This document shows positions 16,458 to 62,307 of a stretch of 64,000 nucleotides of DNA, piece after piece (position 1 is the stretch's first letter; every line of letters starts with the position of its first letter). The notes beneath the pieces are model-generated. The model was given only the letters and a program-made list of their open reading frames with translations, was not told the DNA's origin and did not search any database. Made by a program: the position numbers and the translations under genes. This DNA comes from Paraphysomonas bandaiensis (lineage: Eukaryota; Protista; Chrysophyceae), in contig CBFFRP010000410.1 in the NCBI GenBank assembly GCA_965644295.1, positions 248,001 through 312,000 of the forward strand, in the 5' to 3' direction.

Positions 16458-19400
16458 ATGGCTTTACTTCTTCGTGTTGCTGTCTATTTATTAGGGATAG
16501 TGTCAGTCATATCCATAGCTGATACGGAGATATATATACCTCAAGGTAACGACATTCGTATGTTATATATGACCATGTAAATCTAGTTCACAGGCCCTAT
16601 ACTCGAAGAGTTTGATATTGATCTCAACTATGGTGGGTTAGTGTTGTATTTTGATCAGCCAGTGCTTGCCAATACACTGGACATAGACAAGATATCACTA
16701 CAAGCCAATGCATCTATTCAAAGCGACACTGCTTTTCATTTCACTGAGAGAGTGTTTAATAACCTCACAGCGCAGGGAAATACAACTGATGTTTATTTCT
16801 ATATGAGTGCTGATGACTTTGCACGACTGACGGTTCATCCTCAGATTGCCAAGTCTCGAGATCAGACATACATATCGATTGATTTTGGAGCATTTAATTC
16901 GTCTATCGGTGTTCCTTCAGAAGAAATAAATAGTACTCATGCATTGAAAGCATCAGGTTATGTCGAAGACACGTCACAGCCATACGTGAAGCAGTTCGCC
17001 CTTGATATGAATGATGGTATCCTCACTATAGACTTTTCTGAGCCTATGAATGTGTCATCTTTCACTCTTGAAGGTCTTGCTTTACAGCGAGTAAGAAATG
17101 CTCTCTACGATAGTTCTTATGTGCGGCTCATAGAAAGGGCAGGATGTGCGTCTGGAGATGACTATCAGCGACGCATTGTTTGCACGTTGGGTGTTGAAAA
17201 CATGAATGAAATCAAAAAACTTCCGAAACTGTGCACTATGGCTTCGAATACTTATCTTTCTGCATGGAAATCATTTGTTAGTGATCTCTCGGGTTCATCT
17301 GTTGCAATTGAGGGGTTTGAACGGATATTCGGTATGCGTACTGTGAATTTCACCTTAGATACGACTAACCCTACACTTGACTCGTGGGACCTCGATCTGA
17401 ACACCGGGCGCATCACCCTTCATTTTTCAGAGACTATATATATGCCGCTGTTCAACTATAGTGGTGTCATACTATGCAACAACGATACGTTGAATGGAAG
17501 TACTGTAACTATGCGTGTGGACGATCCGCTGGTGACATCATATGCTAGCACTGAGGATGTGGTAATTCAGCTGAATAGCTATCAATTCAACATCATCAAG
17601 TATCACGAAAATATTGCCACAGGAAGTGGGAATGATACATACCTTATCCTCGAGCCCTACCTTGCTGTTGATTATGCTGCCATAGCCAACCGTTATCAAG
17701 GATTGGATGCCTCCGTGTCCAATGCCCGCAGAGTATCGAACCTCACTCTGGACACAATATCTCCTGATCTGGACCATGCAGAAGTGGACATGACTGATAT
17801 GACACTTACTCTTGTATTTACTGAAATTGTAGATATAGCCACCATTTCGATGAGGGAGTTCCAGCTGCAGTCCTCTGCGGAAGTGTACGATGACACTGAG
17901 ACTTATCAGTTTCCGGATGCCAGTGTGCTTGTGACCAGTGAAGATAGTACAACCATTATTTTCTCACTCGAGGAGGTGTTTGCAAACTTAAAAGTGTTAT
18001 CTCGACTTGGAAGGAGAGCTGAGTCAACTTTTGTGGCTTACACCTACCGCTTTATTGATGATCAAAGCGGTAATGACGTAGTGGAGATCCCTACGAAGCG
18101 TGCTCGTCAGGTAACAGTGTTCTACCCAGACATTAACCCACCATCAGTGGTTTCATGGTCAATTGATATGAGCATCGACAGACTAGCGTTATCATTCACT
18201 GAACCCATCGAGGTTAATTCTTTCGATGTTACCCAGTTGATATTACAGAGTAGTGCCACAGCGAATCCTGCGAATTCTTACGTGAAACTAACCGAGTCAT
18301 CTGTTGTCGATGAAAATGTCCTGAACGACGTATATATAGTACTCTCTTATGAAGATGCGAACAGTGTGAAGCGCACGGCTGATTTATGCAAGTCGAACAG
18401 CACGTGTTTTCTTTCCTTTGGGTCTCACTTGGGGTATGATGTGTCTACCTACTCACTGAGCGGGGAAGAGTTCCATAGCCCGATAGATCCCCTAGATTAT
18501 GCACTTCAGCCTTCTTTGTATGTTCCTGACACAAGGCCGCCCATTTTGCTCTCTTTCGAAGTAAACTTAAATTGTGGTCAATTTGTTATGTATTTTTCGG
18601 AACCTGTGAATACGAGAACAATCGATCCTACTGGAATCGTTCTTCACGAGTTTAATGCGACATCATCTTCCAGTTTTTCCACTCTGTCGAGCAAAGCATT
18701 CAGTCAATATACAGAAACAGATTCCGAAGTTATTACGCTGGTCCTCACAAGACCTAAGTTTTATTCAATAAAGAAGCAGGCAATATTCAGTCAAAATTAT
18801 CCCCTCTGGATAACTCTTACCAACAACACTTTCTTTGATAGTGCAGGCAATTACTTAGATGGATCTTTGTCGGGCACTGGTTCAAGCAACAGTGTTTTAC
18901 AAGGAGGAGGAGAGCCGGCTTTCATATCTCCCACGTTATATCGAAACGATGATGATGGCCCTACTATTGTAGCGATGAGTAGGTCTGCTGATGATGATAA
19001 TATGACGATATATTTTAACGATGCAGTCGACGTGAGTTCTTTCGTTCGATCTAAAGTTCGTATAGCCTCTTTTGAAGCCATAAAAACTGTTCCACTCACA
19101 CTGTCTCATGTGTTGTCAGAAAATATTTCAGATTACAAGATAGTGGTATCTTTGGCACCGATGACATCCGTAATTGCTGCAACACCACCAATTAATACCA
19201 ATCAAGAAAACTCCTATGTGTACCTTGAGACCAGCTCAGCCATATGGGATGCTTATAATAACCCGAATTCGGCAATGCCGCCGAATTCAGCTGTCCGTAT
19301 GGGTGGAGCGTTATTATACTTCACATTGGATGTAGATAATGGTATTCTCTCGTTCGAATTGGTTTACCCTATTACCATATCACTCAACGATATCGTACCG

Positions 19401-22400
19401 AGCGATTTCTTGCTGATTAACTCTCAATCAGGTCTGCAATACACTTTCATAAATTTCAAGACTATTGTGAGATCTCCTGACGGATATTGCATTGACGTAT
19501 ATATGTCTGAAAATGATGTTAGCAATATCAAGTCATCGCGAATAGTGTCGTCACGATCTGTCATGAAGCTCCAAGTTGAATCTTCGGCAATCACTGATTC
19601 ACTCGGTCTAGAGCTTAACGCCACCACAGTATTACCATGTGCACAGCTGAAGTCTGATAACATTCGTCCGCAAGTAGTGTCCTTTTCGATTAATATGGGA
19701 ACGGGAATCATGACAATCACTTTTTCTGAGCACATTGTCGTGGCTTCCATTGATCTTACGAAGTTAACTCTTGCGGATGCGGCATCCAATGCGAACAATA
19801 CTCTCACTTTGAAAAATTCCGAGCTATCCTCGATTACTGCGGCGCTATCGACTACCACTACGGTTATGATTAACCTAAGCACTGGTGTCACTCGCCCAAC
19901 TGATCGTGATCGTATTCATCTTTCGGAGGCAATCGCGTTGAGTGCGGACTCAACATATCTTATTGTTGAAGACGGCTTTGTTCACGATGCGTCGAATACC
20001 CCCAATTATGTGGAGCCAATTACTGAAAATGCTGCGCTACACGTTGATACACTGTCACCAGATACGACTCCTCCAAAGTTACTGAATTATGAACTAAATT
20101 TAGCAGAGCGGACGATAACGCTGACATTCAATGAAGCTGTTAACGCATCCACTAACAGGGTGTACCTTTATACCTTACTGGCTAATCCTAGTTATCCTAC
20201 AGTTGACTTGTACACTTTAACTGACTCGTCTCAAACATCGCCGGCTACCCTGGCTTATGAGGCAACATCAGTAATCGTGATTGATCTCTCAGAAGAAGAT
20301 GTTGACAATATTATGCTGCAGTATCCAAACTTATGCACATCACCGAGTAACACGCACTTAGCTTTTCCGACTGGAACTATCAAGGATATTGCCTTTTCGT
20401 CCAACTCTATTGAACGGGTTTTTGAAGTGTTCGCAATGCGGGTTTCCCAATATGTTCCTGATACTACGTTGCCGACCATAATGCATTTCGATGTATCCAT
20501 TGAGTCCAGGGAGATTTCTTTTCTTTTCAACGAAATGATTGACTGTTTTGCGACTGATGTGGATAAAATATCGTTTCAAAGTACAGAATTCATTGGAACT
20601 CTCTCTGAACGTTATACTCTGCAATCCAGCTCCACGAGTCTCATTAACTGTGAATCACATAACTACATCACTCGATCGGTAACTCTTGAAATAGGCCGAG
20701 AGGATATTGTGCGGATCAAAACTTATAACAAGTTACTGAAGTCTGGTGCGGCATCCAACCTTTATTTACAGAGTGGGGCATTTGTTGATGTCACTGGAAA
20801 TGGTATTGCTGCCATACCTGATGGTCACACACTACCCGTAAGAAATTACACCAGTGATAGCACTCGACCAAAGTTATTGGGATATACTGTTAATGAGCAA
20901 AAACATCTACGATTACGTTTCAGCGAACCAATGATGCGTAGGAGCTTTGATGTTACACAAATTTCCTTACATAATTCACGAAGCCCCTCCATTTCGTACC
21001 AGCTTACCCAATCAGCGACATCTATTGTGTTTGTAGACGAAAATCTGTTGACAATAACACTATCCCTGCATACGGATTATGATAACATTGATGGATATAC
21101 TGATATTTTTACAGCACAAAGCACCTGCTATTTGAGTATCACTGATGATTGTGTGAATGATATGGCTACCAATCCTGTGATTGAGATACCTGTTTCTCGT
21201 GCTCTCAATGTTGGACCAGCAGTTGTTGACTGGGACCTGGATTTGAACTCTGGTGAGATATCTGTCTACTTTTCAGAGAGAGTAAGAACCAACTTCACGA
21301 TAAATGGAATTGCCATACAGAACAATCAGACTGATCCTACAGTGGCTGTGACTTTCACAGAAACAAATCAGTTTGTTTCGCCATTGAACAATACCTTTTT
21401 TGATGAAGACACTGCCTTCGTAGTTACGCTATCGAGTGCAGACATTTCCAAGCTCAAGTTGTCTGGGCTACTTAATCCGTCTGGAGAAAATATGTTTTTG
21501 TACTCACCGCCTGGTCTGACAGCTTCACCGGTAACAACCACTGTTGTCCCACGTTTATTGTCGACTGAAACATTCTTTGCTCTTCCAATTGGATCTTATA
21601 CCTCTGATTCTACCGGGCCAGTTGTTCTGTCGGTTGTTCTTGACCTCAATGAAGGATATATCACATTGGTATTTGATGAACCAGTAATGGGCTCGTCATT
21701 AGATGTGACAAAGATCTCCCTACTCTCTAATAGCTATGGGAACTCTATCATGTTGACCTCCAGTGATAACGAAAACTTAATGAACTCATCTATCATCAAA
21801 TTCAATATGAGCACTGCGGATTTAAATGCTGTAAAAACGGCTTACATCGATGGCACACTGGACAAAATTATGTGTCATGTTAGTTTTATAACGGATTTGT
21901 TTGGAAACTATCCATCTGGTGACGATGACTTGGAAGGCCAGAGTTTCATTGTCGATATCACTTCATTTGTGCCTGATTCAACTCCTCCTGAGCTGGTTGG
22001 TTGTACCCTTTTTATGAGCACGAATACGATTGACGTTGCATTTAATGAAATTGTAGATATCTCTTCAATTCAGCCTCACTATATTAGCCTTCACTCTCGT
22101 TATATATTATCTCCTAGCACCGAAAATATTACTCTATCAAACTATTCTATTGTTGAGGGAGACTTGGCCCAGCGGGATAGTAACATCACCATAAACATGG
22201 GATTGCTTCGATATGATGCCTTCCAGGTTCAATCACATTCGTCAATTGGTAAAAACACGTCAACAACTTATATTCATATAAGAAATGCCCGAGACGTGAG
22301 TGGCAACCTCCGTACAGATGAAACATTGGTCCAGTGTGTACGCATTGATAATGATATGTCTTCGCCTGTTTTGGAATCATTCGACTTCAATCCGGATGGG

Positions 22401-25400
22401 TTTGGGGATGTGCAGATATCTCTATACTTTTCTGAGGTCGTTTCGATAATATCATTTGATTGTACAGAGTTTTCGTTTGCGTCCTCAAAGTCCTCGACTC
22501 CGAGTGAAACAGTTACATTGATTCCTTCTGACTGTACCATAATTACAGGTGTCGATTCCCGTTTGATTGAATACACTGTCTCGGCGACGAAGTTCAGCAC
22601 CATTGGGAGTTCTCACAGTAATACGTGGATGTACATTCCCTCTCCTTCTACTACAGCCGATATCTCTGGGAACGTTGTAGGTAGTGTGCTATCGAGTGAA
22701 GCCTTGCCGGTTGGTCCTCAAGTAACAGGAGTTTTACTGGATATGACGATAGGCAGAGTTGATGTAATTTTCTCGAAAGATGTCGATTTATCTGCTGCAT
22801 TCAATAGCTCTGGAATCGGATTTTATTCTTCAGTGTCGTCATTATCCCATTTTTTTAACGGGACATCTAGTCTCAGCGGCTATCTACCTGGTTCAGACTC
22901 TCTGGAATTTATACTTTCGGTTAATATTGGTGTTTCTGATTTAATCAGACTTAAGAGTATAGACGTCCAAGAACATCGAGTATTCTTTTTATTATTGGAA
23001 GATGTATTTTTTGACAGTGATGGAGTGCCAACAGGATCGATTTCAAGTGGAGACAGTTTTGGTATTCAACGATTGACTGAAGATTCTGAATCACCTATTT
23101 TTTATAGTGTTGACATAGACATGTCTTTAAATACTATCACGTTTCAGTTTGATGAGCCCATACGGTTGTCATCGTTCCGTTCTGAAAAATTTGTCCTGCA
23201 GTCTGCACCAGGTACACTGGACAGTGGTTTTATTAAGTATTATGAACTCTCTGGAGGGGTGACTGATCAATATTTGGGTAGTTACTCCGTCACTGTTGTG
23301 TATTACTTAACTGACACAGACTCCGGTAGTATAAAACTCCTTGAAGGAATTGCCGATAATTCGACAACAACGTATTTGTCAGTTGAACACTCTCCACTTG
23401 AAGATATGGCTGGAAATAGTCTGGCCAGCATATTCCCGGAGAATGCCGTTCAGTTTGATCGCTTTGTTGAGGACACACTTGCACCAATTTTACTGTCGTT
23501 TACGCTAGACATGAACGTTGGAGAGCTCGAGCTATCTTTTTCTGAGCCAATAGACGCAAGTTCTGTTTACACTCCAGCAATTGTTTTGCAAAATAGATAT
23601 TCACGAGGGAAAACAATAACACGACATCAGGCCTTAACAACTAATTCATATGTCACCAGCAGTAATGGCTTTGTTATAGCGATTCAGATAGGAGAAATCG
23701 ACATGACATCTATAAAGAATACAGATAATTTGGCCCGCAGGAGGACGTCTAGCTATCTTGCTGCGTCATCCCTCGCTGCCAAAGATTTGGCTGGCAACGC
23801 AATGATTGCTATCATAGATGGTGAGGCATTAAAAGTGGAGACCTTTGTGTTCGACACAACACGCCCCACAATCACTGGAATTGGGCTGGACATGTCCGCG
23901 GAAACATTGACGTTTTATCTCTCGGAATTAGTTGAGACAGCATCAGTGGACATTTCTGCTGTCGAAATCTCGGAATATGCTGATCCTGAACTTGGGTCCT
24001 CGTACCGATTTACATCGGGATCTAATGTCCTGGTAAATAGTGAAATGCGATTTTCATCGTATATAGCGTTCAAGTTGTCTTCTCGCGATGTCAATGGCAT
24101 TAAGTGGAGGAGACCTCTGGGGTTCGACAAGAGCACAACTTATTTTTCTGTTACTCAAAATCTCTGCTACGATACGTTTAAAAACAGACTTCTCGCGGTA
24201 GATGCGTCTGCAGGAAACGCAATGCAGGTGACAAGTTATACAAACGATTTCGATCCTCCCAGCTTGCGACACTACTATCTTGATATGGATTCGTTAACAG
24301 TATATTTGGAGTACAGTGAGTCGATCTTGTTGTCAAGCATTACACTTGAACAGGGAATTTTACAGCGAACTGCAGTCAAGAGATTTGGAAATCATGTTAA
24401 CTTGAGTTACTCAACACCCCGCCTTGGCTCAGATGTTGACAGCAATATTCTGCAGATAGTAATCGATCCTATTACATCACACGAAATGAAATGGAACCGT
24501 ATTGCTGTATCAGCCGAATCAAGTTATTTTACTTGGGGCTCGGAATTTGTCGCCGACGGTTTTGGTAACTATATTGTACCTCTATGGGATGGAAGCGTGT
24601 TAGGTAAGTTGCATGCACTTCATCCTATCATTAGTTCTGATATTAAGTTTCTAGACAATCATCCGATATTGCCTGAAGTTTACAATCCAGATGTAACTTC
24701 TCCAATATTGGTGAAGTGGTTTTTAGATCGCGCTAACCTCAGAATATATATGCAGTTTTCAGAGCCGGTGTCAATGCTGCGTTGCACTGGAATTAGTATA
24801 AGTTCGTCGAGTATAAATATGACGCTCGATACATGCAGCCCTCAGTATACTGAATTCGGTGTGAAGTTAATATTTAACTTGCTGGATGAAAGCGACACAT
24901 GTGACAGATGTCCTGCCGATGACATGTCGTATATTTCAGATGATGGAGAGTCTCTGTTTGCAGAAAATGTTGTTTCTACTTTGGACAATTCACTCGATCA
25001 ATTATATTTATCGATTGAGAGTAATACATTTGTTGACTTGGCTGAAAGCGCAAACTTCTTTGTCGAAGATTTTGACCGTTTAGAAAGCGGACCAGGTTTA
25101 TCATTTATCAATAATTTTGTGTTGGCACTAATTCTATAATTTAGAATGTGGTCCATGTGACGAGGGCACATTCTTGCTTAGTAATTGTACAACTGCGGAG
25201 GATCGAATCTGTGCTACTTGCTCGCAGTGTGGAGTAAGAGAGTGGGTAGTAAGCGAATGTACACTGGAGCATGATACGAGTTGTTTAGGTTTGTGCGCAA
25301 TAGACATTAATATAAAATATGTGCTTAACCATTATTATTACAGCGTGTTCCGATTGCCCATACGGAACGTACATTTCTTCACCTTGTCAGCAACGAGCTG

Positions 25401-30922: not shown

Positions 30923-32536
30923 CTACACAGCCATTTTCATTTTAATGGCAGCGTGCGGCTCATACCCCTCAATAGTGAAGTCGGAGTATTCAAACGAGTC
31001 AATATCTGTAACATTCGGGTTGATGCGTAACTTCGGGAAAGCCCTGGGAGCTCTCTTGATTTGCTCTTTCAGAGCATCCACATGGTTAAGATAGACGTGT
31101 GCATCACCTATACAGTGCACAAAATCTCCAGCCTTGAGCCCACATACTTGTGCGACTAGTCGGGTAAGTAACGAATAGGAGGCAATGTTAAAAGGTACTC
31201 CTAGGCCCATATCTGCCGATCGCTGGTACATCTGGCAGCTTAGTTCTCCGTTGGCGACATAAAATTGACAAAACATGTGGCAAGGAGGGAGAGCCATGAG
31301 CGCTAAGTCCGCAGGATTCCACGCTGTGAGGACGATTCTCCGGTCAGTTGGATTAGTTTTAATCTTCTCGATACACTGCTTGAGCTGATCAACGCCCTTA
31401 CCACTATAGTCAGCGTGCATGTCTTCGTATGTGGCGCCAAAGTGTCTCCACTGGAAACCATACACCGGTCCAAGGTCTCCCTCCTCTCTGTGGGTTAGGC
31501 CAAGGTTATCAAGGAACTCGCGCGATCCGTTACCGTCCCATATATGGATATTCTTCTCAGCGAGCTCATTGGCGTTAGTACGTCCTCTCACAAACCAGAT
31601 AAGTTCTTCTGCCACGCCACGCCAAAACACGCGCTTCGTAGTGAGAAGAGGGAATTGATCATCCCTCAGACTGAAACGCATCTGCATTCCAAATAAAGAA
31701 AGTGTTCCTGTGCCGGTTCTATCACCTCGCTCAACTCCACGAGTGAGAATGTCCTTCAGTGCCTGTAAGTATTGGTTTTCTTCATGGTTACAACACAAGC
31801 TAGGGGATGAGAGGCCTAATTCCATATCATATATTCGCTCAAACTCGGTGAAACGGTACATAAACCCATTCTCCTCACAAGATGATGATCGATAAGCGAG
31901 ACGGTACTTATCTGCGGGAATGGTGGGGAAGAAAGTGTCACAGTCAGGGACAGGAGTTTCGATAGATGTCAAGTAAATGCGTTCGCACATTGGAAGCGCA
32001 ACAGCCTCACGATAGACAGATTCACCGCCAATAACATATACTTTATCAATTGTTGGCACCATATCAGCCGCGGAAAGCATCCTCAAAGCTTCGATCAATG
32101 ATGGAGCGACCATAACAGTGTCAGGAAGAGATAGAGCCCTGCTGTACGTAAGTATAATATGAAGCTACTTCATAACTTACTCTTTGATCTGTGGATTTCT
32201 GCTCAACACAACATTGACTCTGTTCTTTAGGGGTCTGAACTTGACGGGAATGGACTGCAGCAGATGTGAGTGTACAGCTCGAACAGCAATGAACAGCACG
32301 TCACCTCCCATGTTTTGCGCCCCATAATAATAGCATTCTGAGTTGATTGAGCGCATGTTGTTGATACTTGCTTGAAGAATGCTGTATCTCCTGGAATACG
32401 CCACGGTAGACTTCCTCCCTTACCGATAGCTGATACACGTACATAGAAGATCACCGGAGTGTACATATACATACATACACTCACCGTATGTATCTGCAGT
32501 AGCAGCTACTAATATTCCGAATCTCTTCATCTCCAT
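30923..32536 (-). CDS. DHFR-TS: Bifunctional dihydrofolate reductase-thymidylate synthase
   Basis: DHFR motifs [24 protein letters not shown]|[24 protein letters not shown]; TS motifs [46 protein letters not shown] at 32536; three introns. Confidence 0.97.
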
Positions 32537-32971: not shown

Positions 32972-33725
32972 ATGACTGAAGTTGTGGAGATCAGTGATCT
33001 ATTGGTGAAGCCTCAGTGGTAATAATGCCTGTTGTTTGCAGTCTATATATGTATATATGTGTGCTAATGACTGTATGTGATCAGCTTCTGTCTTAACCAG
33101 CACCCGTCTCATCCTTTCTCGAACCTCTTTGTTGGTGATGAAACTCTATATCTTCGAAGTGATGTTGATGGTCAGTTATGTTGCAGTGTGTATATATGAT
33201 CCTCATCGCAGCATTGTGCAGAGCAACTCCTAATTAATTTGGTGTTTCGGACAACTGTCAGACTACACGCACTCAACTTTGTAGCTCCTGATGATGGTAA
33301 TCTAATGATATTCTTTCCTGTAGTATTCTTAATTATTACAGAGTCTGCACCAACTGGTATAAAGCTGTTCACTAACCTGCAGAACCCGGGATTTAGCGAC
33401 GTTGAGGATGTGGAGCCTGTCCAAAAGCTTCTTCTTGAGCCAAGTGACTTTCATCCAGATCATAAAACTAATCTCAAGCTTGTCAAATTTTTACACGTTA
33501 ATAGGTTGTATTTTTGACGTGATGGTATTCATCTTACACTTTTTCACAGCTTGACAATATACGTTGATGAAAATGGTGGAGAAGAATTCTCAACATTGAG
33601 CGGGTTGAAGGTAAAGTTATAATATGTAGACTTCGATAGGTATTTTAATATTGTGATAGATATATGGCCACGCACTCGATAGTGTTAATGTTGCGGCAAT
33701 TCATGAACGCAGGAATGAAGAATGA
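32972..33725 (+). CDS. PITH-domain (proteasome-interacting thioredoxin) protein
   Basis: Spliced product LYLRSDVD|EQLLINLVFRTTVRLHAL...SAPTGIKLFTN...GFSDVEDVEPVQ...LKLVKFLHVN|SLTIYVDENGG is a canonical PITH pattern; stop at 33723-33725. Confidence 0.9.
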
Positions 33726-34215
33726 GTACTATACGTACAGTGAAGATCTGTGCGCATTGCTAGTATTAAGTTGTAATAATATGCAGCGATAGCGTTAATT
33801 TCTGTAACTGTTCCAGTAGAGAAATGAATTTATGATCATACTTATTTTGATAGTTTGGGTGCTAAGGTAGGTCGCATTTACAGATACGTTCTGCAGAAGT
33901 TTGTAGAAATGATTACATAGCGTAAAAGTGCTGTAATAGGCTAGAATGAAATTAAATCGTTAGATTGCATTGAGAAATATAACGTTAACGAGCTTGCATG
34001 ATTCCACTGAAGAGGTACATATAAAATACAAATTCTTTGAGTGATGGGTCCTTCGTGTTACCACACAAATACACAAATGTAGTTTCAAGTATACAGCCAA
34101 CACAAGTGGTCAATGAACCGAAGATGCCCCATATTGACAGCGTAACTAATCACTGCGTGCGGCCCTCTAGTGAGTGCTGCGACCACGCACCTCTATCTAT
34201 GTACACATTGCATAG

Positions 34216-35920
34216 TACTGCTGGAAATTGCTCATTTTAAGCTAGATCTCAGAGAGAATATGTCGTTAGACTACTAGATAGATTTATTATTTATTATTTA
34301 TTAATAACATTTACGCGAAGTTGTGATAAACAACACTAACTCATTTTGTTCCATGCATAATCTCCTACATATGTTGACCTCTCGTTACTAAACATATCTT
34401 GAAAGATCGAACTATTTCAGTTTCTCAATATCATCACAGCATTTGTACATCACTATATTTCACTGTATTCTCGTACATTGTCTTCAAGTGACATACTGAA
34501 TATACTAGAATAAGATCCATATTCTTATACTCCCACTCAATGTAGAATGCAGTGAGATAAAGCAACAGTGATCACAATAATCTGATAATGCTATGACTAT
34601 CTAGTCCCATAGGTAAAACAGATGTGAAATCTTTTAAAGATACATATATAACTAGCAGTCAACTAGATATACAGTTATGTGGGATTTTCACCCACTAAAA
34701 CACACCTTTAACCTCTTCGGGGTCGTTTCTTCTGCTGCTCCTCCACTCTGTTAGACACACTTCTCTTAACCCCGGTAATCGTTTTCTCATGACGGCTGAA
34801 GATCTTCGTTGACAATGCCTTTGTAAAAATATCGGCCGCCATATCATCCGTAGATACATGAATCAACTTTGCTGTAGGAAATTTTCCAATAACATGTTCT
34901 CTTATCTAGTGATACTTGATGTCAATATGCTTCGACCTCTTATGATACACTGGATTTTCGGAAAGATACTTTGCACTCTTACTGCTCATAAAGAATGGAG
35001 TCGGCTTCGCTACCAAGAGTCCGAGCTCCTTGAACACCCCCCGAAGCCACACCAGTTCTTGCATAGCCGCATACTCCGCCATATACTCAGATTCCATACT
35101 TGAAGTCGCAACTGTGGTCTGAAGATTGGACTGCAAGGCCAAAATGCCCACACATAGAAACACGATATATCCCGTTGTGGACCTCCGAGTCATCCTATCA
35201 CCAGCCCAGTCTGAGTACTGAATACATGTAAATCAAACTCACTCCCACTGAATCTGATGCCCTCATCAACTGTACCACGTAAATATTTCAACAAATGAAT
35301 AGCTAATCTGCAAGCCGCATATGTTGGAGAAGTGCTAAATCGAGCCAATAACCCCACAGCATAAGCTAGATCAGGTCTAGTATGAATCGCCATATTCAAC
35401 ACCACTCCAATAATTCCTGTATACGGAAATGATGCAACCCATTGCTTCTGCTCCTCCGTCAGCTCACGTTGCTATGCCAAAAAATCCTGAACATCGGTAT
35501 TGTGTGGAGTCTCCTTGTTCTTACTGCTCTTTCCCATAAATGAACTGAATTTCTTAACGATATTCTTGGCATACTCAGATTGATCAAACATATACCAGTT
35601 ATCACCTCGTGTGATCCTGATATTCAAAATCGTTTACACACACCCAGACCGTGCATCTCAAACGTTTCGCAGAACCTACGCTTAACACTTTCTAAGTAGG
35701 TGAGATCAGCAGACGCAATTATGTTATCATCTACATATATCTACAATACATGCAATTTTCCGTTACTCCATCTCATATATAAGCATGTATCCAAAATGCA
35801 AGCAGTAAAATGTAACGACTAAATAAACTTTTCAATATGTCGCGGTGAGGACCTCAATGCCTTGATTAATTGAAAACACCATCCTGCTGGCAATACCTCA
35901 TCAGGTGGTGGTGCCATGTG
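34216..35920 (-). mobile_element. Degenerate Ty1/Copia RT-RNase H fragment with putative PPT and 3' LTR
   Basis: YVDD (~35725), TRPDLAYAVGLL, RRSTTGYI..QTTVATSSMESEY..HKRSKHIDIKYH, with stops and frameshifts. PPT-like TTGAGTGGGAG (34540-34530) is followed by a possible TA...TA LTR at 34529-34216. Confidence 0.88.
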
Positions 35921-36995
35921 TGCCACCGGGTGCAGAATGTATATGGAATGAATATGTAAATATGATAACAAAGTATCAAATGCAAAGATGAATATGTTTA
36001 TTACTATGCCCGGCAGCTGCCTGAGCTCCCTCAAGCACCTATCTGAAGACGCCTCCTCAAAAGTGTTAAAAAGCAAGTCTAGTAACTTATTAATTACAGC
36101 ACATATAACACAAACAACTCATTGAGAACCATTTACATTCTATGAACTATCTAGAAATACAACAGAGAACACAGAACAATATTCTACAAAAGATTCCACA
36201 AGATTTGGTTGATTATGTGGAGATATCCACGTTCTGGAAGATTCACGTAGAGGCCTATAGGAAGAGCCTTAAACCAACTCAACAGCCACAGACCAAAAAT
36301 GCAGTGACTAGCCAATCAGCGTTCAGCAGTAATTCATAATACAGCAGCTGTATACCTATAACTGTATCACTGCGTTCTATTCCATACAGTATACAAAGCA
36401 GTATAATCTGAGTACACCAATCAGATCTCTCCATTGTTCACACAGCAGTATAGGTATATATAGAGAGAGAGTGAAGTGTGTCTTCATTCGAAGATGCAAA
36501 CTGTACACACTTCGTAATACACACAGTCCTCTAGAGCCCCTGTAGCATATTAACCTCACTGGTCTTTAAGGAGTACCTCTCTCAAGATTCGGTGAGGTAC
36601 TCCTGCACACTCCCACTGCTGTATATCTATAACAACAACGTTAGCTCATAAAGGCTGTACTCTGTATTGTGATTATACGTGTATATGGTATACGTATATT
36701 GAGGTATACATATACAGCAGCAGTATATACTGACCGCAACTGTGTGTTCATATCTTTGCATGTTGAGATTGTTTTGTCCATAGTTGGAAAAAGATGGTGC
36801 TTTAGAAACTCTACAGATGTGTATATACAAGTTGGACGTATCTTTTCGAATATTCTACTAGTGGGGCAACACAATCATGCTCCACCACTTAGTCATGTTG
36901 ATGCTGCGTATCTTCTCTCTGTATATTCATATCTATACGATCTCATTATATTATCATACACTCAGAGCATCACAACTACACCACAAGTTACACAC

Positions 36996-39278
36996 ATGGC
37001 AGATGATGTTAGACGAGCTAATGTTCAGGCGAAATGCCGTATGATTATTGAGTGTCTTCAGAAGATACTAACGAGTGAAGATACAGCGGCTGATGTTCGG
37101 CCCCATATCAGTGACGTGATCAACAGATGCGATACGATTTTAACTAACTTAAATCCAACAAAAGTTGCTCTCTATGGCGGCACAGGAGTGGGTAAATCGC
37201 GATTCATCAATCAGTTACTTCAAGAGCCTGTTGTTATAGCGGGTGCACAGTCAAAGTCATCCACTTCAGTGGTGAGTGAGATTGTCTCTCGGTCAGACAT
37301 GAAGACATACAAAGCAACGGTGTATTTCATATCAACCCGAACTATGAAGGAACGCCTTGAATATGTGGCGGAAATGCTGCAGGAGAATCGTGCACTCGAA
37401 GGAAATAGCAGACTCGAAGCTATAATGACTGTGGTAAGGCACTGCTTCAGAAACGACCTTAGCTTTGAGAACCCCACTCCACTAACTCCAGACGAAGAAA
37501 ACCGTGTACTCTTACAGAACATTGGGCGCCAGCCACTAGTGCTTGAGCAAAACTCCTTGGTGGAGTTACGAGAGGCCCTGACGATCTATTCTCATCTACC
37601 TGCAAACAATGCGCCACCCGATCAATGGCAGGCCATGACTGTGGACTTTATTCGCATCGAAGGAAACTTTGAACACCTTCCCAGCAATGTGATTGTGGTG
37701 GATTCTCCGGGTCTCTTTGATGCGGTGGACATGAAGTCCCAGCGAGCCCTTGAGGTTGTGGATTCTTGGCAGCAGATTTGGTTCACGGATCGGACTAGTA
37801 GATTTCTGAAAAAGAGACAAGAACAACAGGCTTTTCGAGAGCTGTGTGCGACAGAATTGCGCATGAAAAAAGTTTCTGTTGTATGCACGTATGCCGATGA
37901 AATGTTGGGCATGGAAGGTGACTGTGGTGACGATCCCCACACACCAGCAGATCTGGATTTCGAAAGGATGGAAATAAATGCCAGAAACCATATCATTGAA
38001 GTCTTGTGTAGGGGCGACGCGGACGATGTTCGTAGAGAAGTGCGCATACCAGTCGGATTTGTATCGAATGCACGACGTAAGGACGATCAATTTGGCATGG
38101 AGTACTGGCGCAATAGGTTGGGAGCGCTTGGAGCAATGCAGGGTGAAACTTTAAATGCTATGGAGGACGCGCTGACTGAAGTCATCGGCATGCTAGAGAC
38201 TCTAGGCTTGCGAAATCCTCCACCTAATTTCCCCCAGGGCAATTTGGATGATCTGATCCGAAATATTCGTGCAGCGATTGATACACTCATGGATAAATAC
38301 GCCAACAGGTTTTCCAATCGTGATCAGGTTTACCGATTGTATAGTAACATCTGTGACACTGGTGATTGGGATGATATTCATGGGAATACTTGGAATTCTG
38401 TTATGGACACCGTCCGCAGAGGAATATTTCAGTCGAAAGGCAGACCGCGTCAATACATTGATGTCAACACTGATATTAGCAGCGCGTGGGTTCGAGCTGA
38501 GGATAGAAATATCCGAAATCTGAGGGAGCAGTTCGCTACATTTAGAAACGAAATTCGCCAACTGGAGAGTCAGTGGCAAGAAAAGCCAGCAGGATTCGCT
38601 AAGAGCCTTCGCATCGATGTTGACCGTTGGCAGAACCGCACAACTGTAGTAATGCGGCATGCGTTCGATGTTGCTACTCTCGCCGATCAGATTCGTACCG
38701 ATTTCACTGATGAGAAAGTATATGGACCAAGAGGAAAGAAAGAGAAATATCCAAAGAAAGGTGAAATTCGTAAACAGGTGACTCGTCTGCTGGATAGGCA
38801 GCGTTTGTATCGCGACAACCTGCTGAGGGAAGTAGACGCATTGCAAGCAGCGATTCTGCGCTACATCCAGCCTGTTCAAGAACTGAATCAAAATACTGTG
38901 ACTATCATCACCGGATTGATCCACACACTTAAACGCCTTCCTGATCAAGATAGGTTCTATCTCAACGAAGATCGTGTGCCTGTTGACTTCGTTTGCCCGC
39001 TGACCATGGAAATAATGAACGATCCTGTGTTGGTTGAGGATGGATGTATATTTGAACGCGATGCTATTAATCGCTATTTTGGTAGTCGCCATGAAGCTCC
39101 CTGTCCGCTTTGCAGAAGGCTTATCCGTATCAATGATATCATGCCTCATGACTTCCTCAGGTACCGCATCACTCTCTGGCGGGAGCAGAATCGCATTGAA
39201 GAGCCCGGTGAGTGGTGGATCGGTTTGTGGGAGGATATTGTTGCTCGTCTTCAAAACAATGCTGAAGACAACGGATAG
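36996..39278 (+). CDS. Dynamin-superfamily (NUGGC/SLIP-GC-like) GTPase fused to a C-terminal U-box E3 ligase, 760 aa, intronless
   Basis: G1 GGTGVGKSRFINQLL, G2 STSVVSEI, G3 VVDSPGLFD, G4-like VCTYAD; NUGGC-type helical motif IHGNTW...RRGIF...IDVN; U-box FVCPLTMEIMNDPVLVEDGCIFERDAI...CPLCRR...PHDFLRYRITLW. The first ATG (MADDVRR) is at 36996; the ORF-track extension to 36669 is non-ATG, promoter-like sequence. Confidence 0.85.
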   Translation: MADDVRRANVQAKCRMIIECLQKILTSEDTAADVRPHISDVINRCDTILTNLNPTKVALYGGTGVGKSRFINQLLQEPVVIAGAQSKSSTSVVSEIVSRSDMKTYKATVYFISTRTMKERLEYVAEMLQENRALEGNSRLEAIMTVVRHCFRNDLSFENPTPLTPDEENRVLLQNIGRQPLVLEQNSLVELREALTIYSHLPANNAPPDQWQAMTVDFIRIEGNFEHLPSNVIVVDSPGLFDAVDMKSQRALEVVDSWQQIWFTDRTSRFLKKRQEQQAFRELCATELRMKKVSVVCTYADEMLGMEGDCGDDPHTPADLDFERMEINARNHIIEVLCRGDADDVRREVRIPVGFVSNARRKDDQFGMEYWRNRLGALGAMQGETLNAMEDALTEVIGMLETLGLRNPPPNFPQGNLDDLIRNIRAAIDTLMDKYANRFSNRDQVYRLYSNICDTGDWDDIHGNTWNSVMDTVRRGIFQSKGRPRQYIDVNTDISSAWVRAEDRNIRNLREQFATFRNEIRQLESQWQEKPAGFAKSLRIDVDRWQNRTTVVMRHAFDVATLADQIRTDFTDEKVYGPRGKKEKYPKKGEIRKQVTRLLDRQRLYRDNLLREVDALQAAILRYIQPVQELNQNTVTIITGLIHTLKRLPDQDRFYLNEDRVPVDFVCPLTMEIMNDPVLVEDGCIFERDAINRYFGSRHEAPCPLCRRLIRINDIMPHDFLRYRITLWREQNRIEEPGEWWIGLWEDIVARLQNNAEDNG

Positions 39279-39481
39279 AGATGTGGTGTAGTTTCGCTGG
39301 GTTAAGATATTGTGATTTCGAACATCTGAAAGTAAAAAAACGAAAATAACTATATAATCTATAATATGCATTTATTTATACTATGGCTATGTATATGTGA
39401 TTGTGGGCTACGTGGGCAAGAACCTACCCTATATATGAAAGGGTCAATTACTTAGTTGCTGATGTGTTTTGCCGTTCTATT

Positions 39482-39735
39482 TGCCCCATATTGACAGCGT
39501 AACTAATCACTGCGTGCGGCCCACTCGTGGGTGCTGCGACCACGCACTTCTATCTATGTACACATTGCATAGTTCCCCACCCGGGTTCTCACTTTATATT
39601 CAGCGCTGAATATCGTGTGGTAATGATGTAGCTAGTTGGGTTCAGTAGGTAGCTAGCAAATAACGTATGGGACTTAATCAAGTATTAGTTAGGTACCCAC
39701 CCGGCTCAACCTAAGTACGCGCTCAGAATGGGGCA
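39482..39735. repeat. Complete 254-bp terminal repeat (LTR-like) with ~25-bp imperfect inverted ends
   Basis: Starts TGCCCCATATTGACAGCGTAACTA; the end reverse-complements to TGCCCCATTCTGAGCGCGTACTTA. A partial direct copy lies at 34125-34216. Confidence 0.85.
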
Positions 39736-40087
39736 GAAGACACTTATATCAGTGAAATGGAAACTTTGTTTTTCAAGAAAATATTAACATAATTAATACA
39801 GAATGTAAATTGAAAAATGAAGTAACAATATCCTACGAAATTGACTATATCTCATTCACCTCTATAGCAAAAGAACATTCACATCCACTTTTAGTGTTAG
39901 TAGAAAGGCAGAGAAGCTATGTAACCCTACTTCAAATTATTACAATACTAATCAACGCAGCCTTTTCTCTCTGCGAAATATATAACTTCACAGCTAAAAC
40001 GACTACAAACACAAGTTGTAACTTAACCACGTGACATCAACCCTCAATATCTATGCAGATTTTATAAACACTAAGCTGGACAGAAAC

Positions 40088-41582
40088 TTAATTGTTACTC
40101 TTCTGCATATGAACTGACGGACCATACTCAACGTAGTCTTCCCGAGATATCCACATTTGCTGAAAAGATCCACATATTGAAAGTATAGAGCCACCAATCC
40201 AAGCTGCATGATGCTTCTCGATCGGATCTTGTGATCCAATAACCTTTGCCTATAAGTACAGTATTATTATACATATACCCTTTAAAAATAGCGACTAAGC
40301 TAAACTCACCTTGGCGCAACTAGGCGCAACCTTGGAAATATCCTCAGCTAACCTCGTCGCTATACCATCACATAGTGAACCACCACCAACAAGAATAATA
40401 TTATTCAATAGCTCTCTGCGAATATCTACATCACAGTTAGCAACTGCAGTAAACACTAACTCTGGCAGGGGCGCAGCGGCCATAGATATATCACGATTGT
40501 AAATGCTAATCCTTTGCTGAAATTTTTCAAATGTGTGCTCATATGTACTTGAAAAGTAATCACGCTCTACACACTTGCATATTTCCTCCGACGGATATAT
40601 CAACGTGCCATCAGGTAGTTCATAGGGTGGGATATCTGCTACATCACTACTCGACCCAGAAGATTTATCAGAAGAAATAAAAGACATCCAATGCTTCAAG
40701 TCTCGAATTGTGTCTGATGTGTGCATTTGAAGGAACGAATTACTTACGCATGACAGCGTCTGCTTCCCAAAAACAGATGGTGGTTGAAAACTAGACAACT
40801 GTATTTTCTTGTGACCTTTGAGAACCTTATCTTTCACCAGGTCGTCGAAATAGTTTCCCCCTTGATTCGAACAAACCATAGAGCGAGTGAGGGCAAATCC
40901 GTCCACAACAGGTACAACACGAAGGTGACTTGCACCAATATCTACAATTAGACTTGTCTGGCGTGCAAAACAAAATGAACTCAATGCAGCATTGTGGCAA
41001 AAATACGCTGCAGGGAGCTGCATACTCTCGAATAATATTTCAAGCATCTGTAGTAGAAGTAAGTTATCTGAAAAAATTAGAAAGAAAGAAAAAACCTTTT
41101 CTTTTCGTTCATTTGTTGAGAAGTAGTTTTCAGCGAGTAGAAGTGGATACTTAACATCGGAGTTCCCTCGATTAGTTTCACGAATGCCGTGTTTTAATAT
41201 ACTTTCAGTTGCACACCAATCAATGCCTTCAATAGGGATTAGAGTAAGATTATAAATGCAGTGTGACATACTCTCAGGAGTAACAGCTTTCTTAATTTCC
41301 ATTCCCTCTCTACACACTCTCAGAGCAGAGTCTCCAATATAAAAATCATTAGGGCTGGTTTCCTTGTAACCGACATCCTGTATGGACACCTTAACAATAC
41401 TGTTAATATATAGAAAGGTGTGTACCGTTCTCATAACGAGGGAAGGTGTATCGTATCCTGCAGAGCCAAACCTACAGAGACTATTCCCCATATCAACAAC
41501 ATTAGCGCCGACTTCATCTGAATTAAAACAAAATCAGACAATCAGATAATAATAATAATCTTATCGTACCACCACAAAGCAT
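40088..41582 (-). CDS. ARP4: Nuclear actin-related protein 4 (ARP4/ACTL6)
   Basis: MLCG|DEVGANVVDMGNSLCRFGSAGYDTP, YELPDG, CDVDIRRELLNNIILVGG; last exon AAWIGGSILSICGSFQQMWISREDY with stop at 40088-40090. Confidence 0.88.
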
Positions 41583-60622: not shown

Positions 60623-62307
60623 TCAAGGGTTAGAAGTTTTCGGAGGCGAATTAATCAGAGAAGATATTTTCTTGTTTAATTCCGTGAATGCAGTGTGGAA
60701 CTCCATGATATCGCCCTTGCCCCTTCTCACCTGTGTGTGCACGCAACATTTAAAGATTACAAATGCAAAAGAAAACTATAACCTCTAACAAAGATATGGT
60801 CCCTGGATCTGCTAAAACGGCATATATCTGAACCGATATTCCAATCATTCCTTTGGCCGTTAAAAGAGTTGCCTTTGCCTTCATATTACTCGATTGTTGT
60901 GCCGTAACCTCAAATCCCATTTCACGAAGTGCCTCCGTTACACCACTCATCAGCCGATCGGGGCTTGAGTAGCTAGTGAACTGAAACGTTCTCTTGGTTA
61001 CTTTATCAGCCCGTGGTCGAAAAACTCTATCCAATGCGAATCCACCACACTGATTGACCAAGTCAAATGCATTCAAATGTTTCGGAGCCCGTGCTACTTC
61101 TTGCTGGCCATTATCACTGTCGGCACCACTGTCTGCCTCTTCAGCGTCTTCCACCGCGTTTTGTACTCCAGCCTCAATTTCCTTTTCCGTAGGAACTCTG
61201 GGAACTGCACGGCTGCTCTCGTGCCCTCCATCAACAGGAGCACCTGCCCTTCGGCGAGAATCTCTTCCACTTCCCATCACAGGTTTGCTGTCATCAGGTG
61301 GTGTATCCTGATCTTCTTTTGCCGCAGATCTTGCGGCAGCAACTGTGTTGTTAAGCGAAGGCGTCGGATGATAGCTCTTCGGCCCATCATCAAATGTAAC
61401 CCACGGGTGATTTCGCACATCAGTCAGAGTTACTCGTTCCTTTGGGTCAGCAACCAAAATCGAATCCAAAAGCGAACGAACTTCAGCAGAAAACCACGAC
61501 GGATAGGTGAAATCTGCCGCTTGAATCTTCGAAAATAAGGCCACAATGGTCGATTCGTCGAAAGGAAGAAACCCGGCAAGAAGAACATACAGTATAACTC
61601 CAATACTCCATACGTCTGCCTTCTTCCCTTCGTAACCGCGGTCAGCAAGAACCTCTGGGGCCACGTAATTTGGAGTTCCGCAAGTTGTGTGCAATAACTC
61701 TGTACGGGATGCACCATCACCATCAGCATCACCTACATATAACGATGACAGCCCAAAGTCGCTTATCTTAAGGTTTCCTTGCTCATCTAGGAGTAAGTTT
61801 TCTGGTTTCAAATCTCGGTGACATACTCCTAACCCATGACAGTATTCAACTCCTTCAACTAATTGGCGGAAATAAAAGCGAGCCATTTCTTCTGAAAAGC
61901 GGCCTTCGCTGACAATCTTATCGAACAGTTCCCCGCCAGTTACCAACTCCAAGACAATAAATATTTTCGTTCGCGATGCTAAAACTTCTTTCATGCCTAC
62001 AACATACTGATGTCTTACAATCTTCATGATTGATATTTCCTTCTTGATCTGTGGGCCCATATTTTGCTTCTGAATTTTTTCTTTGTCCAGAACCTGCAGA
62101 ACCCTCCAGTAAGAAACGACTGAAGCAGAGCGCACAGAATACCTTAATTGCAACAGGCTCTGAAGTTTCAGTGTTGACTGCATACTTAACCCTTAACGAA
62201 CAGCCATATCAATAAATTAAAATAGACGGAATTAGAGTGACGTACTTTCCGAACGTGCCTTCACCAAGAGTGCGAAACAGCTCGTACTTTCCGACTTTTT
62301 TAACCAT
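60623..62307 (-). CDS. CIPK: CBL-interacting (SnRK3/CIPK-type) Ser/Thr kinase with NAF domain
   Basis: MVKKVGKYELFRTLGEGTFGK, HRDLKPENLL, LHTTCGTPNYVAPEV, NAF motif HLNAFDLVNQCGGFALDRVF; last exon VRRGKGDIMEFH with stop at 60623-60625. Confidence 0.92.

What the first reader, a model, noticed from the sequence alone, without database searches (positions are those of the whole stretch)
34120..39740. Cargo-carrying mobile element mobilising a dynamin-GTPase/U-box gene
Seen: an exact 5-bp TSD (GAAGA 34120-34124 and 39736-39740) flanks a 5.6-kb unit with TG...CA ends and inverted termini TGCCCCAT/ATGGGGCA. The complete 254-bp right repeat has no TSD of its own, and a ~92-bp direct copy of its start marks the left end, so the whole block appears to have inserted as one unit between PITH and ARP4. 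Its only intact ORF is not a transposition enzyme but a 760-aa intronless GTPase-U-box fusion. Established: TG..CA ends with a 5-bp TSD are typical of retroviral-type DDE integrases (LTR elements, Ginger). Inference: a non-autonomous, trans-mobilised vehicle (LTR/TRIM-LARD-like or TIR composite) that spreads an effector gene, possibly a mobile defence or counter-defence module. No PBS or PPT was found next to the intact repeat, so class and orientation are unresolved.
Basis: partly seen in the sequence, partly recalled or inferred. Interest (0 to 1): 0.9.

Follow-up and report, generated by a model that had tools for sequence, protein, structure and literature searches.

The report
Copia retrotransposon fossil enclosing a GTPase-ligase gene
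A decayed copia-type retrotransposon lies between two host genes, and the place of its own front genes is taken by an intact dynamin-like GTPase/U-box ubiquitin-ligase gene; gene capture by such elements is known, and nothing here shows that this copy ever moved with the gene.

Summary
GAAGA flanks a 5,611-bp block (34125-39735). The right end is a complete 254-bp TG..CA repeat, and 92 bp of it recur at the left end (96% identity). The block holds an intact 760-aa dynamin-like GTPase with a C-terminal U-box.

The minus strand at 34714-36073 carries the broken C-terminal reverse transcriptase and RNase H of a Ty1/copia element. Next to it lie that lineage's polypurine tract and its own LTR start. 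Class and orientation are therefore resolved: copia, minus strand, with the 5' LTR on the right.

About 3.4 kb of non-copia DNA carrying the gene in antisense stands where gag, protease, integrase and the start of RT should be.

The "trans-mobilised vehicle" reading is only partly supported:
- The two LTRs share only their last 92 bp.
- No TGG-type primer-binding site follows the 5' LTR.
- No second copy was found in the window or in public data.
- Seven other members of the gene family lie outside copia elements.

The copy as it stands cannot come from a single round of reverse transcription. Whether the gene arrived with the element or later is open. It is a moderately interesting example of a known kind, gene capture by LTR retrotransposons.

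The parts
34120..34124 (.). Left copy of the 5-bp target-site duplication GAAGA
34125..34216 (-). Terminal 92 bp of the left (3') LTR, shared with the right LTR at 96% identity; probably R-U5; ends ..ATGGGGCA on the minus strand
34217..34529 (-). About 312 bp directly after the polypurine tract. It starts TATAAGAATATGG, like the LTR starts of copia relatives (TGTTGGAATATG in L007). It is a U3-like part unrelated to the U3 of the right LTR.
34530..34539 (-). Polypurine-tract-like motif. TGAGTGGGAG plus the first T of the LTR is invariant in relatives L002 and L007 at the same place. The 11-mer occurs once in the window (0.02 expected).
34714..36073 (-). Broken remnant of copia pol: the C-terminal part of reverse transcriptase plus RNase H. 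It corresponds to residues 1096-1382 of a 1408-aa relative plus that relative's 130-aa tail. It has four in-frame stops and at least two frameshifts. Gag, protease, integrase and the start of RT are absent.
36074..36995 (+). 0.92 kb of non-copia sequence upstream of the GTPase/U-box start codon; no family hit
36996..39278 (+). Intact single-exon gene for a 760-aa dynamin-like GTPase with a C-terminal U-box
39279..39481 (+). 203-bp spacer between the stop codon and the right LTR. At least its first 49 bp are homologous to the 3' flank of the gene in relative L005. There is no TGG-type primer-binding site next to the LTR.
39482..39735 (-). Complete 254-bp LTR, the 5' LTR in element orientation. 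On the minus strand: 162-bp U3 with TATAAAG about 25 nt before the shared 92 bp, termini TGCCCCAT..ATGGGGCA, and an 18-bp palindrome at 39596-39613.
39736..39740 (.). Right copy of the target-site duplication GAAGA

Best explanation
The block is one old insertion of a Ty1/copia-type LTR retrotransposon on the minus strand. It sits in the 3'-3' spacer between a PITH-domain gene and an actin-related-protein gene. The complete 254-bp repeat on the right is its 5' LTR. On the left are the broken C-terminal RT and RNase H, the lineage's polypurine tract, and a 405-bp LTR-like stretch that shares only its last 92 bp (probably R-U5) with the 5' LTR. Where gag, protease, integrase and the start of RT should be, there are 3.4 kb of cellular-type DNA. 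This DNA carries, in the opposite orientation and behind 0.9 kb of non-copia sequence, an intact single-exon gene for a dynamin-like GTPase fused to a U-box E3 domain. The block is therefore a retrotransposon/host-gene chimera of the kind made by gene capture in LTR retrotransposons. In its present form it is a fossil. At least one recombination or gene-conversion step with a related LTR followed integration, and it lacks the cis signals and enzymes needed for another cycle. Only the gene has stayed intact, so it most likely works as an ordinary resident gene. Inferred function: a GTP-driven, oligomerising dynamin-type scaffold that brings an E2 enzyme to its target. Shown: the anatomy, the copia identity and orientation, the fold and domains of the protein, and the contrast in decay. 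Inferred: a single insertion (from the duplication), R-U5 for the shared 92 bp (from the TATA position), the later LTR recombination, and selection on the gene. Open: whether the gene was already inside the element when it integrated (my estimate about 45%) or replaced the element's interior afterwards (about 35%).
For: The duplication and ends are as described; a chance 5-mer match has probability 1.1e-3, and the right LTR has no duplication of its own. A 95-aa open stretch of the minus strand has 27 relatives, with E values down to 3e-38; in L001 and L002 these relatives sit directly after RVT_2 ORFs. tblastn with the L002 polyprotein (rve 598-683, RVT_2 1046-1273) maps only residues 1096-1382 plus the tail to 34714-36073, minus strand. 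The motif TGAGTGGGAG|T plus an LTR start is conserved in L002, L007 and the window and is unique in the window. The LTR alignment shows 92 shared bp and a TATA-like motif at the same 14-nt offset. The pol remnant has 4 stops and 3 frames in 422 aligned codons, against none in the gene's 760 codons. The gene has full-length relatives of about 730-800 aa at about 25% identity. The model has pLDDT 83 and its best fold matches are SynDLP, BDLP, IniA and mitofusin. The U-box matches PUB12 at 3.5e-10. dN/dS is 0.34 against a TARA relative. Chimeras of retrocopies flanked by discontinuous LTR elements, and gene fragments inside LTR elements, are documented (PMC5131818, PMC2774510).
Against: Only one copy could be examined. 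The source genome and its close relatives are absent from the searchable collections. Copy number, empty sites and the donor locus are therefore unknown. The gene is antisense to the element, whereas template-switch capture of an mRNA predicts the same sense. The U3 mismatch needs an extra event in every scenario. The identification of the shared 92 bp as R-U5 rests on a TATA-like motif alone. The pol remnant may already have been broken before integration, which weakens the decay comparison. Substitutions alone at the LTR divergence leave the ORF open in about 15% of simulations.
Confidence: 0.55

Rival explanations
1. First reader's reading. The block is a non-autonomous, trans-mobilised LTR vehicle (a pseudo-LTR retrotransposon) that integrated here with the GTPase/U-box gene already inside, and that spreads this gene in the genome.
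For: The duplication brackets the whole block, and the right LTR has none of its own. The retained parts (5' LTR, 3' pol, polypurine tract, 3' LTR end) are those expected after template switching during minus-strand synthesis (PMC5131818). The foreign DNA (3,408 bp) has almost the same length as the copia part it replaces (about 3,360 bp in L002). The gene is intact while pol is broken.
Against: The U3 parts of the two LTRs are unrelated. No TGG-type primer-binding site lies next to the 5' LTR, although relatives L002 and L007 show TGGTA motifs at that place. The gene is antisense. No second copy exists in the window or in JGI metagenomes. Seven other family members are not near copia sequence.
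Confidence: 0.2
2. The gene arrived after integration. An ordinary autonomous copia inserted here. Later its gag-to-RT part was replaced by ectopic DNA, through break repair with filler DNA or an insertion plus a deletion. The left LTR was converted by a related element.
For: It explains the antisense orientation, the 0.9 kb of non-copia upstream sequence, the missing primer-binding site and the LTR mismatch without any need for mobility. The gene shows no decay, whereas the pol remnant has at least 6 breaks, which fits a younger arrival. Recombination among copia family members is documented in diatoms (PMC2806351).
Against: It needs several independent rearrangements confined to one element. 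Insertion of a 3.4-kb gene-bearing segment into a transposon has no simple known mechanism. The near-equal length of the lost and gained DNA would be a coincidence.
Confidence: 0.3
3. Insertion by homologous recombination into a solo LTR. A 254-bp solo LTR with the GAAGA duplication was present first. A related element carrying the gene, either as a circle or as an ectopic chromosomal donor, then recombined with it through the shared 92 bp. This gives [92 bp][insert][92+162 bp].
For: A single event accounts for both the direct 92-bp repeat and the different U3 parts. The resulting structure matches the observed order exactly.
Against: It requires that a donor element with this gene existed, which has not been observed. 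The sequence inside the right LTR lacks a primer-binding site, so a reverse-transcribed donor is unlikely.
Confidence: 0.15
4. Coincidence. The gene is native to this spot. A 5'-truncated copia lies upstream of it and an unrelated solo LTR downstream. The GAAGA match is chance.
For: It needs only common events. Other family members lie in ordinary gene neighbourhoods (L011).
Against: The 5-mer match has probability about 1e-3. The solo LTR would also lack its own duplication. The two pieces share 92 bp at their outward-facing ends, in the same orientation.
Confidence: 0.08
5. A DNA transposon composite with terminal inverted repeats (Ginger-like), rather than an LTR element.
For: The 254-bp unit has 8 perfect and about 18 of 26 matching terminal inverted bases, TG..CA ends and a 5-bp duplication.
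Against: There is no transposase. The left end continues into a copia polypurine tract, RNase H and RT in the orientation expected of a 3' LTR. A TATA-like box lies at the U3/R position. By my own knowledge, imperfect inverted termini of this length occur in copia LTRs.
Confidence: 0.04

Closest known systems
LTR-mediated retroposition chimeras / pseudo-LTR retrotransposons (Tan et al. 2016, PMC5131818; maize Bs1 as cited there)
   Same: A cellular gene copy sits between discontinuous parts of an LTR retrotransposon. The 3' pol part and the LTRs are kept and the 5' coding part is replaced. The block is bounded by a target-site duplication. The gene has no introns.
   Different: Here the gene is antisense to the element, is complete, and is preceded by 0.9 kb of non-element sequence. 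The LTR pair is mismatched. The parent gene and any junction microsimilarity could not be examined.
Gene-fragment capture by plant LTR retrotransposons (maize B73: 425 intact elements with gene fragments, PMC2774510)
   Same: Host coding sequence lies inside TG/CA-ended, duplication-flanked LTR elements, including copia families.
   Different: The maize cases are fragments inside otherwise intact, often multi-copy elements. Here a whole, apparently functional gene lies in a single decayed copy.
Diatom CoDi copia elements and their recombinant products (Maumus et al. 2009, PMC2806351)
   Same: A copia-type element from a marine protist, about 5-6 kb long, with short TG/CA LTRs in the reported range of 153-844 bp. 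Recombination between family members reshapes copies.
   Different: Membership of a CoDi clade was not tested. The reported recombinants lack the duplication, whereas this one keeps it. No host gene cargo is reported there.
Bacterial and organellar dynamin-like proteins (SynDLP 7zw6, BDLP 2j69, IniA 6j72, mitofusin 5yew)
   Same: The GTPase domain plus helical stalk fold (Foldseek E=2e-12 to 1e-7), with conserved P-loop GxxxxGKS and DxPG.
   Different: 12-14% identity only. A C-terminal U-box (RING in some relatives, a kinase in one) is added. No membrane-binding paddle was assessed.
Plant U-box E3 ligases (PUB12 7xed, PUB14 1t1h)
   Same: The U-box domain at residues 661-737 matches at E=3.5e-10.
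   Different: It is not linked to ARM repeats but to a dynamin-like GTPase.

Membership tests
Ty1/copia LTR retrotransposon | LTRs ending TG..CA with short inverted termini | tested here: met
   The right LTR runs TGCCCCAT..ATGGGGCA and the left end is ..ATGGGGCA.
Ty1/copia LTR retrotransposon | 5-bp target-site duplication | tested here: met
   GAAGA on both sides; chance 1.1e-3.
Ty1/copia LTR retrotransposon | Copia-type pol (RVT_2 reverse transcriptase followed by RNase H, with integrase upstream of RT) | tested here: inconclusive
   Only the C-terminal RT and the RNase H are present, and they are broken. They match residues 1096-1382 plus the tail of a polyprotein carrying rve, SH3_retrovirus and RVT_2. 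The pieces alone gave no Pfam hit. Integrase, protease and gag are absent.
Ty1/copia LTR retrotransposon | Polypurine tract directly before the 3' LTR | tested here: met
   TGAGTGGGAG|T is shared with L002 and L007 at the same place and is unique in the window.
Ty1/copia LTR retrotransposon | Primer-binding site directly after the 5' LTR | tested here: not met
   There is no TGG within 30 nt inside the right LTR. Relatives show TGGTA motifs there.
Ty1/copia LTR retrotransposon | Two LTRs alike over their whole length | tested here: not met
   Only 92 bp are shared; the U3 parts (162 and 312 bp) are unrelated.
Non-autonomous LTR element (TRIM/LARD-like vehicle) | Matched LTR pair, primer-binding site, polypurine tract, interior without element genes, several copies with different duplications | tested here: not met
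   The LTR pair and primer-binding site fail. The interior holds a pol remnant. Copy number cannot be tested, because the genome is not in any collection.
LTR-mediated retroposition chimera | Retrocopy flanked by discontinuous parts of one LTR element | tested here: met
   The order is 5' LTR, gene, 3' pol, polypurine tract, 3' LTR end.
LTR-mediated retroposition chimera | Retrocopy in the same sense as the element, as the template-switch model implies | tested here: not met
   The gene is on the plus strand and the element on the minus strand.
LTR-mediated retroposition chimera | Microsimilarity at the switch points; intron-bearing parent gene elsewhere | not testable with these tools
   No parent locus is available.
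Ginger-like or other terminal-inverted-repeat DNA transposon | Terminal inverted repeats plus a DDE transposase or its remnants | tested here: not met
   Imperfect inverted termini are present, but there is no transposase. The ends continue into copia LTR features.
Dynamin superfamily GTPase | Large GTPase domain with P-loop and DxxG, followed by a helical stalk | tested here: met
   Dynamin_N hit, weak in the query and 2e-11 to 3e-16 in relatives. G61, G66, K67, D236, P238 and G239 are invariant. Fold matches at E=2e-12.
U-box E3 ubiquitin ligase | U-box domain | tested here: met
   Pfam U-box at 46.8 bits against a cut-off of 21.4. Match to the PUB12 U-box at 3.5e-10. Ligase activity was not tested.

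The most novel reading that the evidence does not exclude
A copia derivative has swapped its gag-to-integrase region for a complete, self-promoted dynamin-like E3-ligase gene set in antisense, keeping the native length. It has been copied in trans by related elements, so an immune-type effector gene is spread by retrotransposition. On this reading, the unusually open 389-codon frame on the element's own strand, just behind the 5' LTR, is kept open because the element RNA needs a translatable first frame.
Probability: 0.12. Interest if true: 0.75.

Novelty: new member of a known kind. Interest (0 to 1): 0.4.

Why it matters
If the gene did travel inside the element, this would be a rare natural case of a whole working cellular gene moved by an LTR retrotransposon in a scarcely sampled marine protist lineage. 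Most known cases carry only a fragment. The gene would also be set in antisense, the arrangement used in engineered retroviral vectors. As the evidence stands, the block mainly shows how a transposon fossil can come to house a host gene. It also adds a family of dynamin-like GTPases with exchangeable C-terminal output domains (U-box, RING, kinase) that has no described function.

Tried and rejected
- Exact look-ups of ten window proteins found none in the 15-billion-protein collection.
- The synteny or empty-site test failed. The best relatives of the ARP4 neighbour are only 34-38% identical. Neither the predicted empty-site junction nor the LTR terminus has an exact match in JGI metagenomes.
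- The gene has no relatives in IMG/VR viral contigs.
- PADLOC gave only a marginal LeoA hit, E=0.008, so there is no support for a known defence system.
- Rfam and tRNA scans of the window were empty. The bacterial promoter/terminator scan was uninformative.
- Pfam on the separate pol pieces gave nothing. Identity came from relatives and their neighbours instead.
- I first thought that relatives share a native frameshift between RT and RNase H. Reading the junctions showed that they lie at different protein positions, so these are simply broken copies.
- The closest relative of the gene, L005, is joined mid-gene to plastid DNA with an abrupt GC jump, so it gives no context. L010 is similar.
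- Inversion and two-element recombination models were rejected, because they would not leave matching duplications on outward-facing ends.
- Steps left out under the rules. The pol pieces were never joined across stops or frame changes. No consensus of the element or its LTRs was built. Places of breaks are not listed. The primer-binding site was not compared with a tRNA, because none was available from a tool.
Full report
1. Observation.
GAAGA occupies 34120-34124 and 39736-39740. Between them lie 5,611 bp. The right end, 39482-39735, is a 254-bp unit that begins TGCCCCAT and ends ATGGGGCA. Its first 92 bp recur at 34125-34216 with four mismatches. No further copy exists in the 64-kb window. 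At the local base composition, two given 5-mers match by chance with probability about 1.1e-3. The right unit has no duplication of its own (CTATT against GAAGA). The outer duplication is therefore best read as the mark of one insertion whose ends are 34125 and 39735. The flanks are a PITH-domain exon (33239-33517; E=1.7e-10) and an actin-related protein gene (40295-41491). These two genes converge, so the block sits in a 3'-3' spacer.

The minus strand between 34714 and 36073 encodes the broken tail of a Ty1/copia polyprotein.
- A 95-aa open stretch from this region finds 27 environmental relatives, with E values down to 3e-38 and up to 84% identity.
- On longer contigs these relatives lie directly downstream of RVT_2 reading frames, in the same orientation (L001, L002).
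- L002 carries a 1408-aa polyprotein with integrase core (598-683), SH3_retrovirus and RVT_2 (1046-1273).
- tblastn of that protein and its 130-aa tail against the window maps only residues 1096-1382 plus the tail, all on the minus strand within the block.
- The remnant has four in-frame stops and lies in three different frames, so it has at least two frameshifts over 422 aligned codons.
- Everything upstream of residue about 1095 is absent: gag, protease, integrase and the first 50 residues of the RT domain.
I searched the pieces separately, and I give neither the places of the breaks nor any joined reading.

3. Orientation and the 3' end.
About 175 nt downstream of the pol remnant, on the minus strand, lies TGAGTGGGAG followed by TATAAGAATATGG. 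The same purine-rich motif, followed by TGTTGGAATATG (L007) or TGTTGAGTTGTG (L002), lies at the same place in two copia relatives. The 11-mer occurs once in the window, against 0.02 expected. This is the polypurine tract and the first bases of a 3' LTR. The element therefore lies on the minus strand: its 5' LTR is the complete right repeat and its 3' LTR runs from 34529 down to 34125.

4. The LTR pair does not match.
Aligned in element orientation, the two LTRs share the terminal 92 bp. Beyond that they share only a TATA-like motif (ATAAAGTGAG on the right, TTAAAATGAG on the left), at the same 14-nt distance from the shared part. The remaining 162 bp on the right and 312 bp on the left are unrelated. 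Because the TATA-like box sits about 25 nt before the shared part, I infer that the 92 bp are R-U5 and the differing parts are U3. Established retroelement biology says that both U3 copies of a new insertion are copied from one template. The present pair therefore cannot be the direct product of one round of reverse transcription. The right LTR has matched inverted termini and abuts the duplication, so it is original. The left U3, and perhaps the neighbouring pol, was probably converted later by a related element that shares R-U5. Alternatively, the whole interior entered a solo LTR by homologous recombination through the 92 bp, which would produce exactly [92][insert][92+162]. Recombinant copia copies are known from diatoms (PMC2806351).

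5. Primer-binding site.
Directly inside the 5' LTR the sequence reads AATAGAACGGCAAAACAC and has no TGG within 30 nt. Relatives L002 and L007 show TGGTA motifs shortly before gag. No tRNA gene is in the window, so complementarity could not be tested.

6. The foreign segment and its gene.
Positions 36074-39481 (3,408 bp) show no copia homology. They hold the plus-strand ORF 36996-39278.
- Pfam gives U-box (E=3.2e-12) and weaker MMR_HSR1 and Dynamin_N hits.
- An exhaustive profile-free search finds 68 proteins at E<=1e-10. About twenty of them are colinear full-length relatives of about 730-800 aa at about 25% identity. Their C-termini carry U-box, RING or, in one case, a kinase.
- The P-loop (G61, G66, K67) and DxPG (D236, P238, G239) are invariant.
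- An AlphaFold model built on 19 sequences has mean pLDDT 83.
- Its best structural matches are the dynamin-like proteins SynDLP, BDLP and IniA, then mitofusin, Drp1 and Mx (E=2e-12 downwards).
- The U-box matches plant PUB12 and PUB14.
"Dynamin-GTPase/U-box" is therefore correct.
- The gene is a single exon, while DHFR-TS, PITH and ARP4 next door are split.
- The closest relative is a TARA fragment: 72% amino-acid and 76% nucleotide identity over the last 149 codons, dS 0.64, dN/dS 0.34. Its homology continues 49 bp past the stop codon.
- The gene line is therefore much older than the LTR divergence (4/92) and has been under purifying selection.

7. Did the gene travel with the element?
For:
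- The duplication encloses it.
- The retained copia parts are those expected when minus-strand synthesis copies the 3' end, switches to another template, and switches back near the 5' end (the model of PMC5131818).
- The foreign DNA is within about 50 bp of the length of the part it replaces, as judged from L002.
Against:
- The gene lies antisense and brings 0.92 kb of upstream sequence, which a captured mRNA would not.
- The LTR pair and the primer-binding site fail.
- There is no second copy in the window and none in JGI metagenomes.
- Seven other genomic or transcript contexts of family members contain no copia sequence. One of them is an ordinary 21-kb cellular neighbourhood (L011).
The source organism is essentially unsampled: no exact proteins were found, and ARP4 relatives reach only 38% identity or less. 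Copy number, empty sites and a donor locus could therefore not be examined. I put about 45% on the gene having been inside an LTR element before it reached this site; this figure includes the homologous-recombination route. I put about 35% on later replacement of the interior, about 8% on coincidence, and the rest on other readings.

8. State of the copy.
At the break density of the pol remnant, about nine to eleven breaks would be expected in 760 codons. The gene has none, P about 1e-4 or less. The caveat is that pol may have been broken before integration. With substitutions alone at half the LTR divergence, about 15% of simulated copies stay open. The element is a fossil, and the gene is the only maintained part. 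Transcription from the right LTR, if any, would run antisense through the gene; this is inference only.

9. Function of the protein.
By analogy with dynamin-like proteins and U-box ligases, I infer nucleotide-dependent self-assembly that positions an E2-binding U-box. The exchange of the C-terminal output domain among relatives (U-box, RING, kinase; a four-GTPase protein with STAND-like hits) recalls immune-type families. No test supports a defence role: the best PADLOC hit is E=0.008, and there are no viral relatives.

10. Comparison and novelty.
Gene capture by LTR retrotransposons is well documented. Maize has 425 intact elements with gene fragments (PMC2774510). Chimeric retrocopies flanked by discontinuous LTR elements, some of which behave as non-autonomous elements, are described in animals, and the same paper cites maize Bs1 (PMC5131818). 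This case belongs to that kind. Its particular traits are a complete, conserved gene, antisense placement behind non-element upstream sequence, and a lineage with almost no genomic data. I rate it a new member of a known kind, with interest 0.4.

11. Limits and conduct.
All inferences on history rest on one copy. 

Noticed in passing
window 38202-39371 (minus strand): A 389-aa open frame runs exactly codon-aligned antisense to the C-terminal half of the GTPase/U-box gene and starts 110 nt inside the 5' LTR. All 17 TTA/CTA/TCA codons of the gene lie in its first ~400 codons, none in the last 359 (P about 6e-4 by synonymous shuffle). The frame is not open in relative L005 and has no Pfam hit.
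   Followed up: partly
L005:7054 and L010:~1450: Two metagenome contigs join a fragment of a homologue of the gene to AT-rich non-nuclear DNA with an abrupt GC jump. In L005 the partner is plastid DNA (TIC20, rpl19, sufB, rpl33, rps18). In L010 the partner side carries a SpoU methylase. They are probably assembly chimeras, but it is the same pattern twice.
   Followed up: partly
window 11026-11117 (plus strand): A second small crumb of copia RNase H: 75% nucleotide identity to the remnant in the block, tblastn E=6e-7. A lone TGCCCCAT at 10512-10519 is within chance expectation.
   Followed up: no
window 39596-39613: An 18-bp perfect palindrome, ATATTCAGCGCTGAATAT, lies in the U3 of the right LTR and overlaps the TATA-like box. 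CCCACCCGG-type direct repeats lie on either side.
   Followed up: no
window 36074-39481 versus L002: The foreign DNA (3,408 bp) is within about 50 bp of the length of the copia segment it replaces (about 3,360 bp in relative L002). The interior length of the block (4,952 bp) is close to the 4,953-bp repeat period of L002.
   Followed up: no
whole window: The gene content points to a photosynthetic or stramenopile-like protist: fused DHFR-TS 30923-32484, a CIPK-type kinase with NAF domain 60750-62183, PA-RING proteins, and a 2832-aa ORF 16641-25139 with a Big_5 hit. The neighbours have many short introns. The lineage is almost unsampled: none of ten proteins is in the 15-billion-protein collection, and ARP4 relatives reach only 38% identity or less.
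   Followed up: partly
L012:9846-12116: In one relative the GTPase part (588 aa) and the RING/U-box part (146 aa) are separate adjacent ORFs. They lie in a gene-dense contig with few family hits and a weak DUF5906 neighbour, which may be a viral or mobile context.
   Followed up: no
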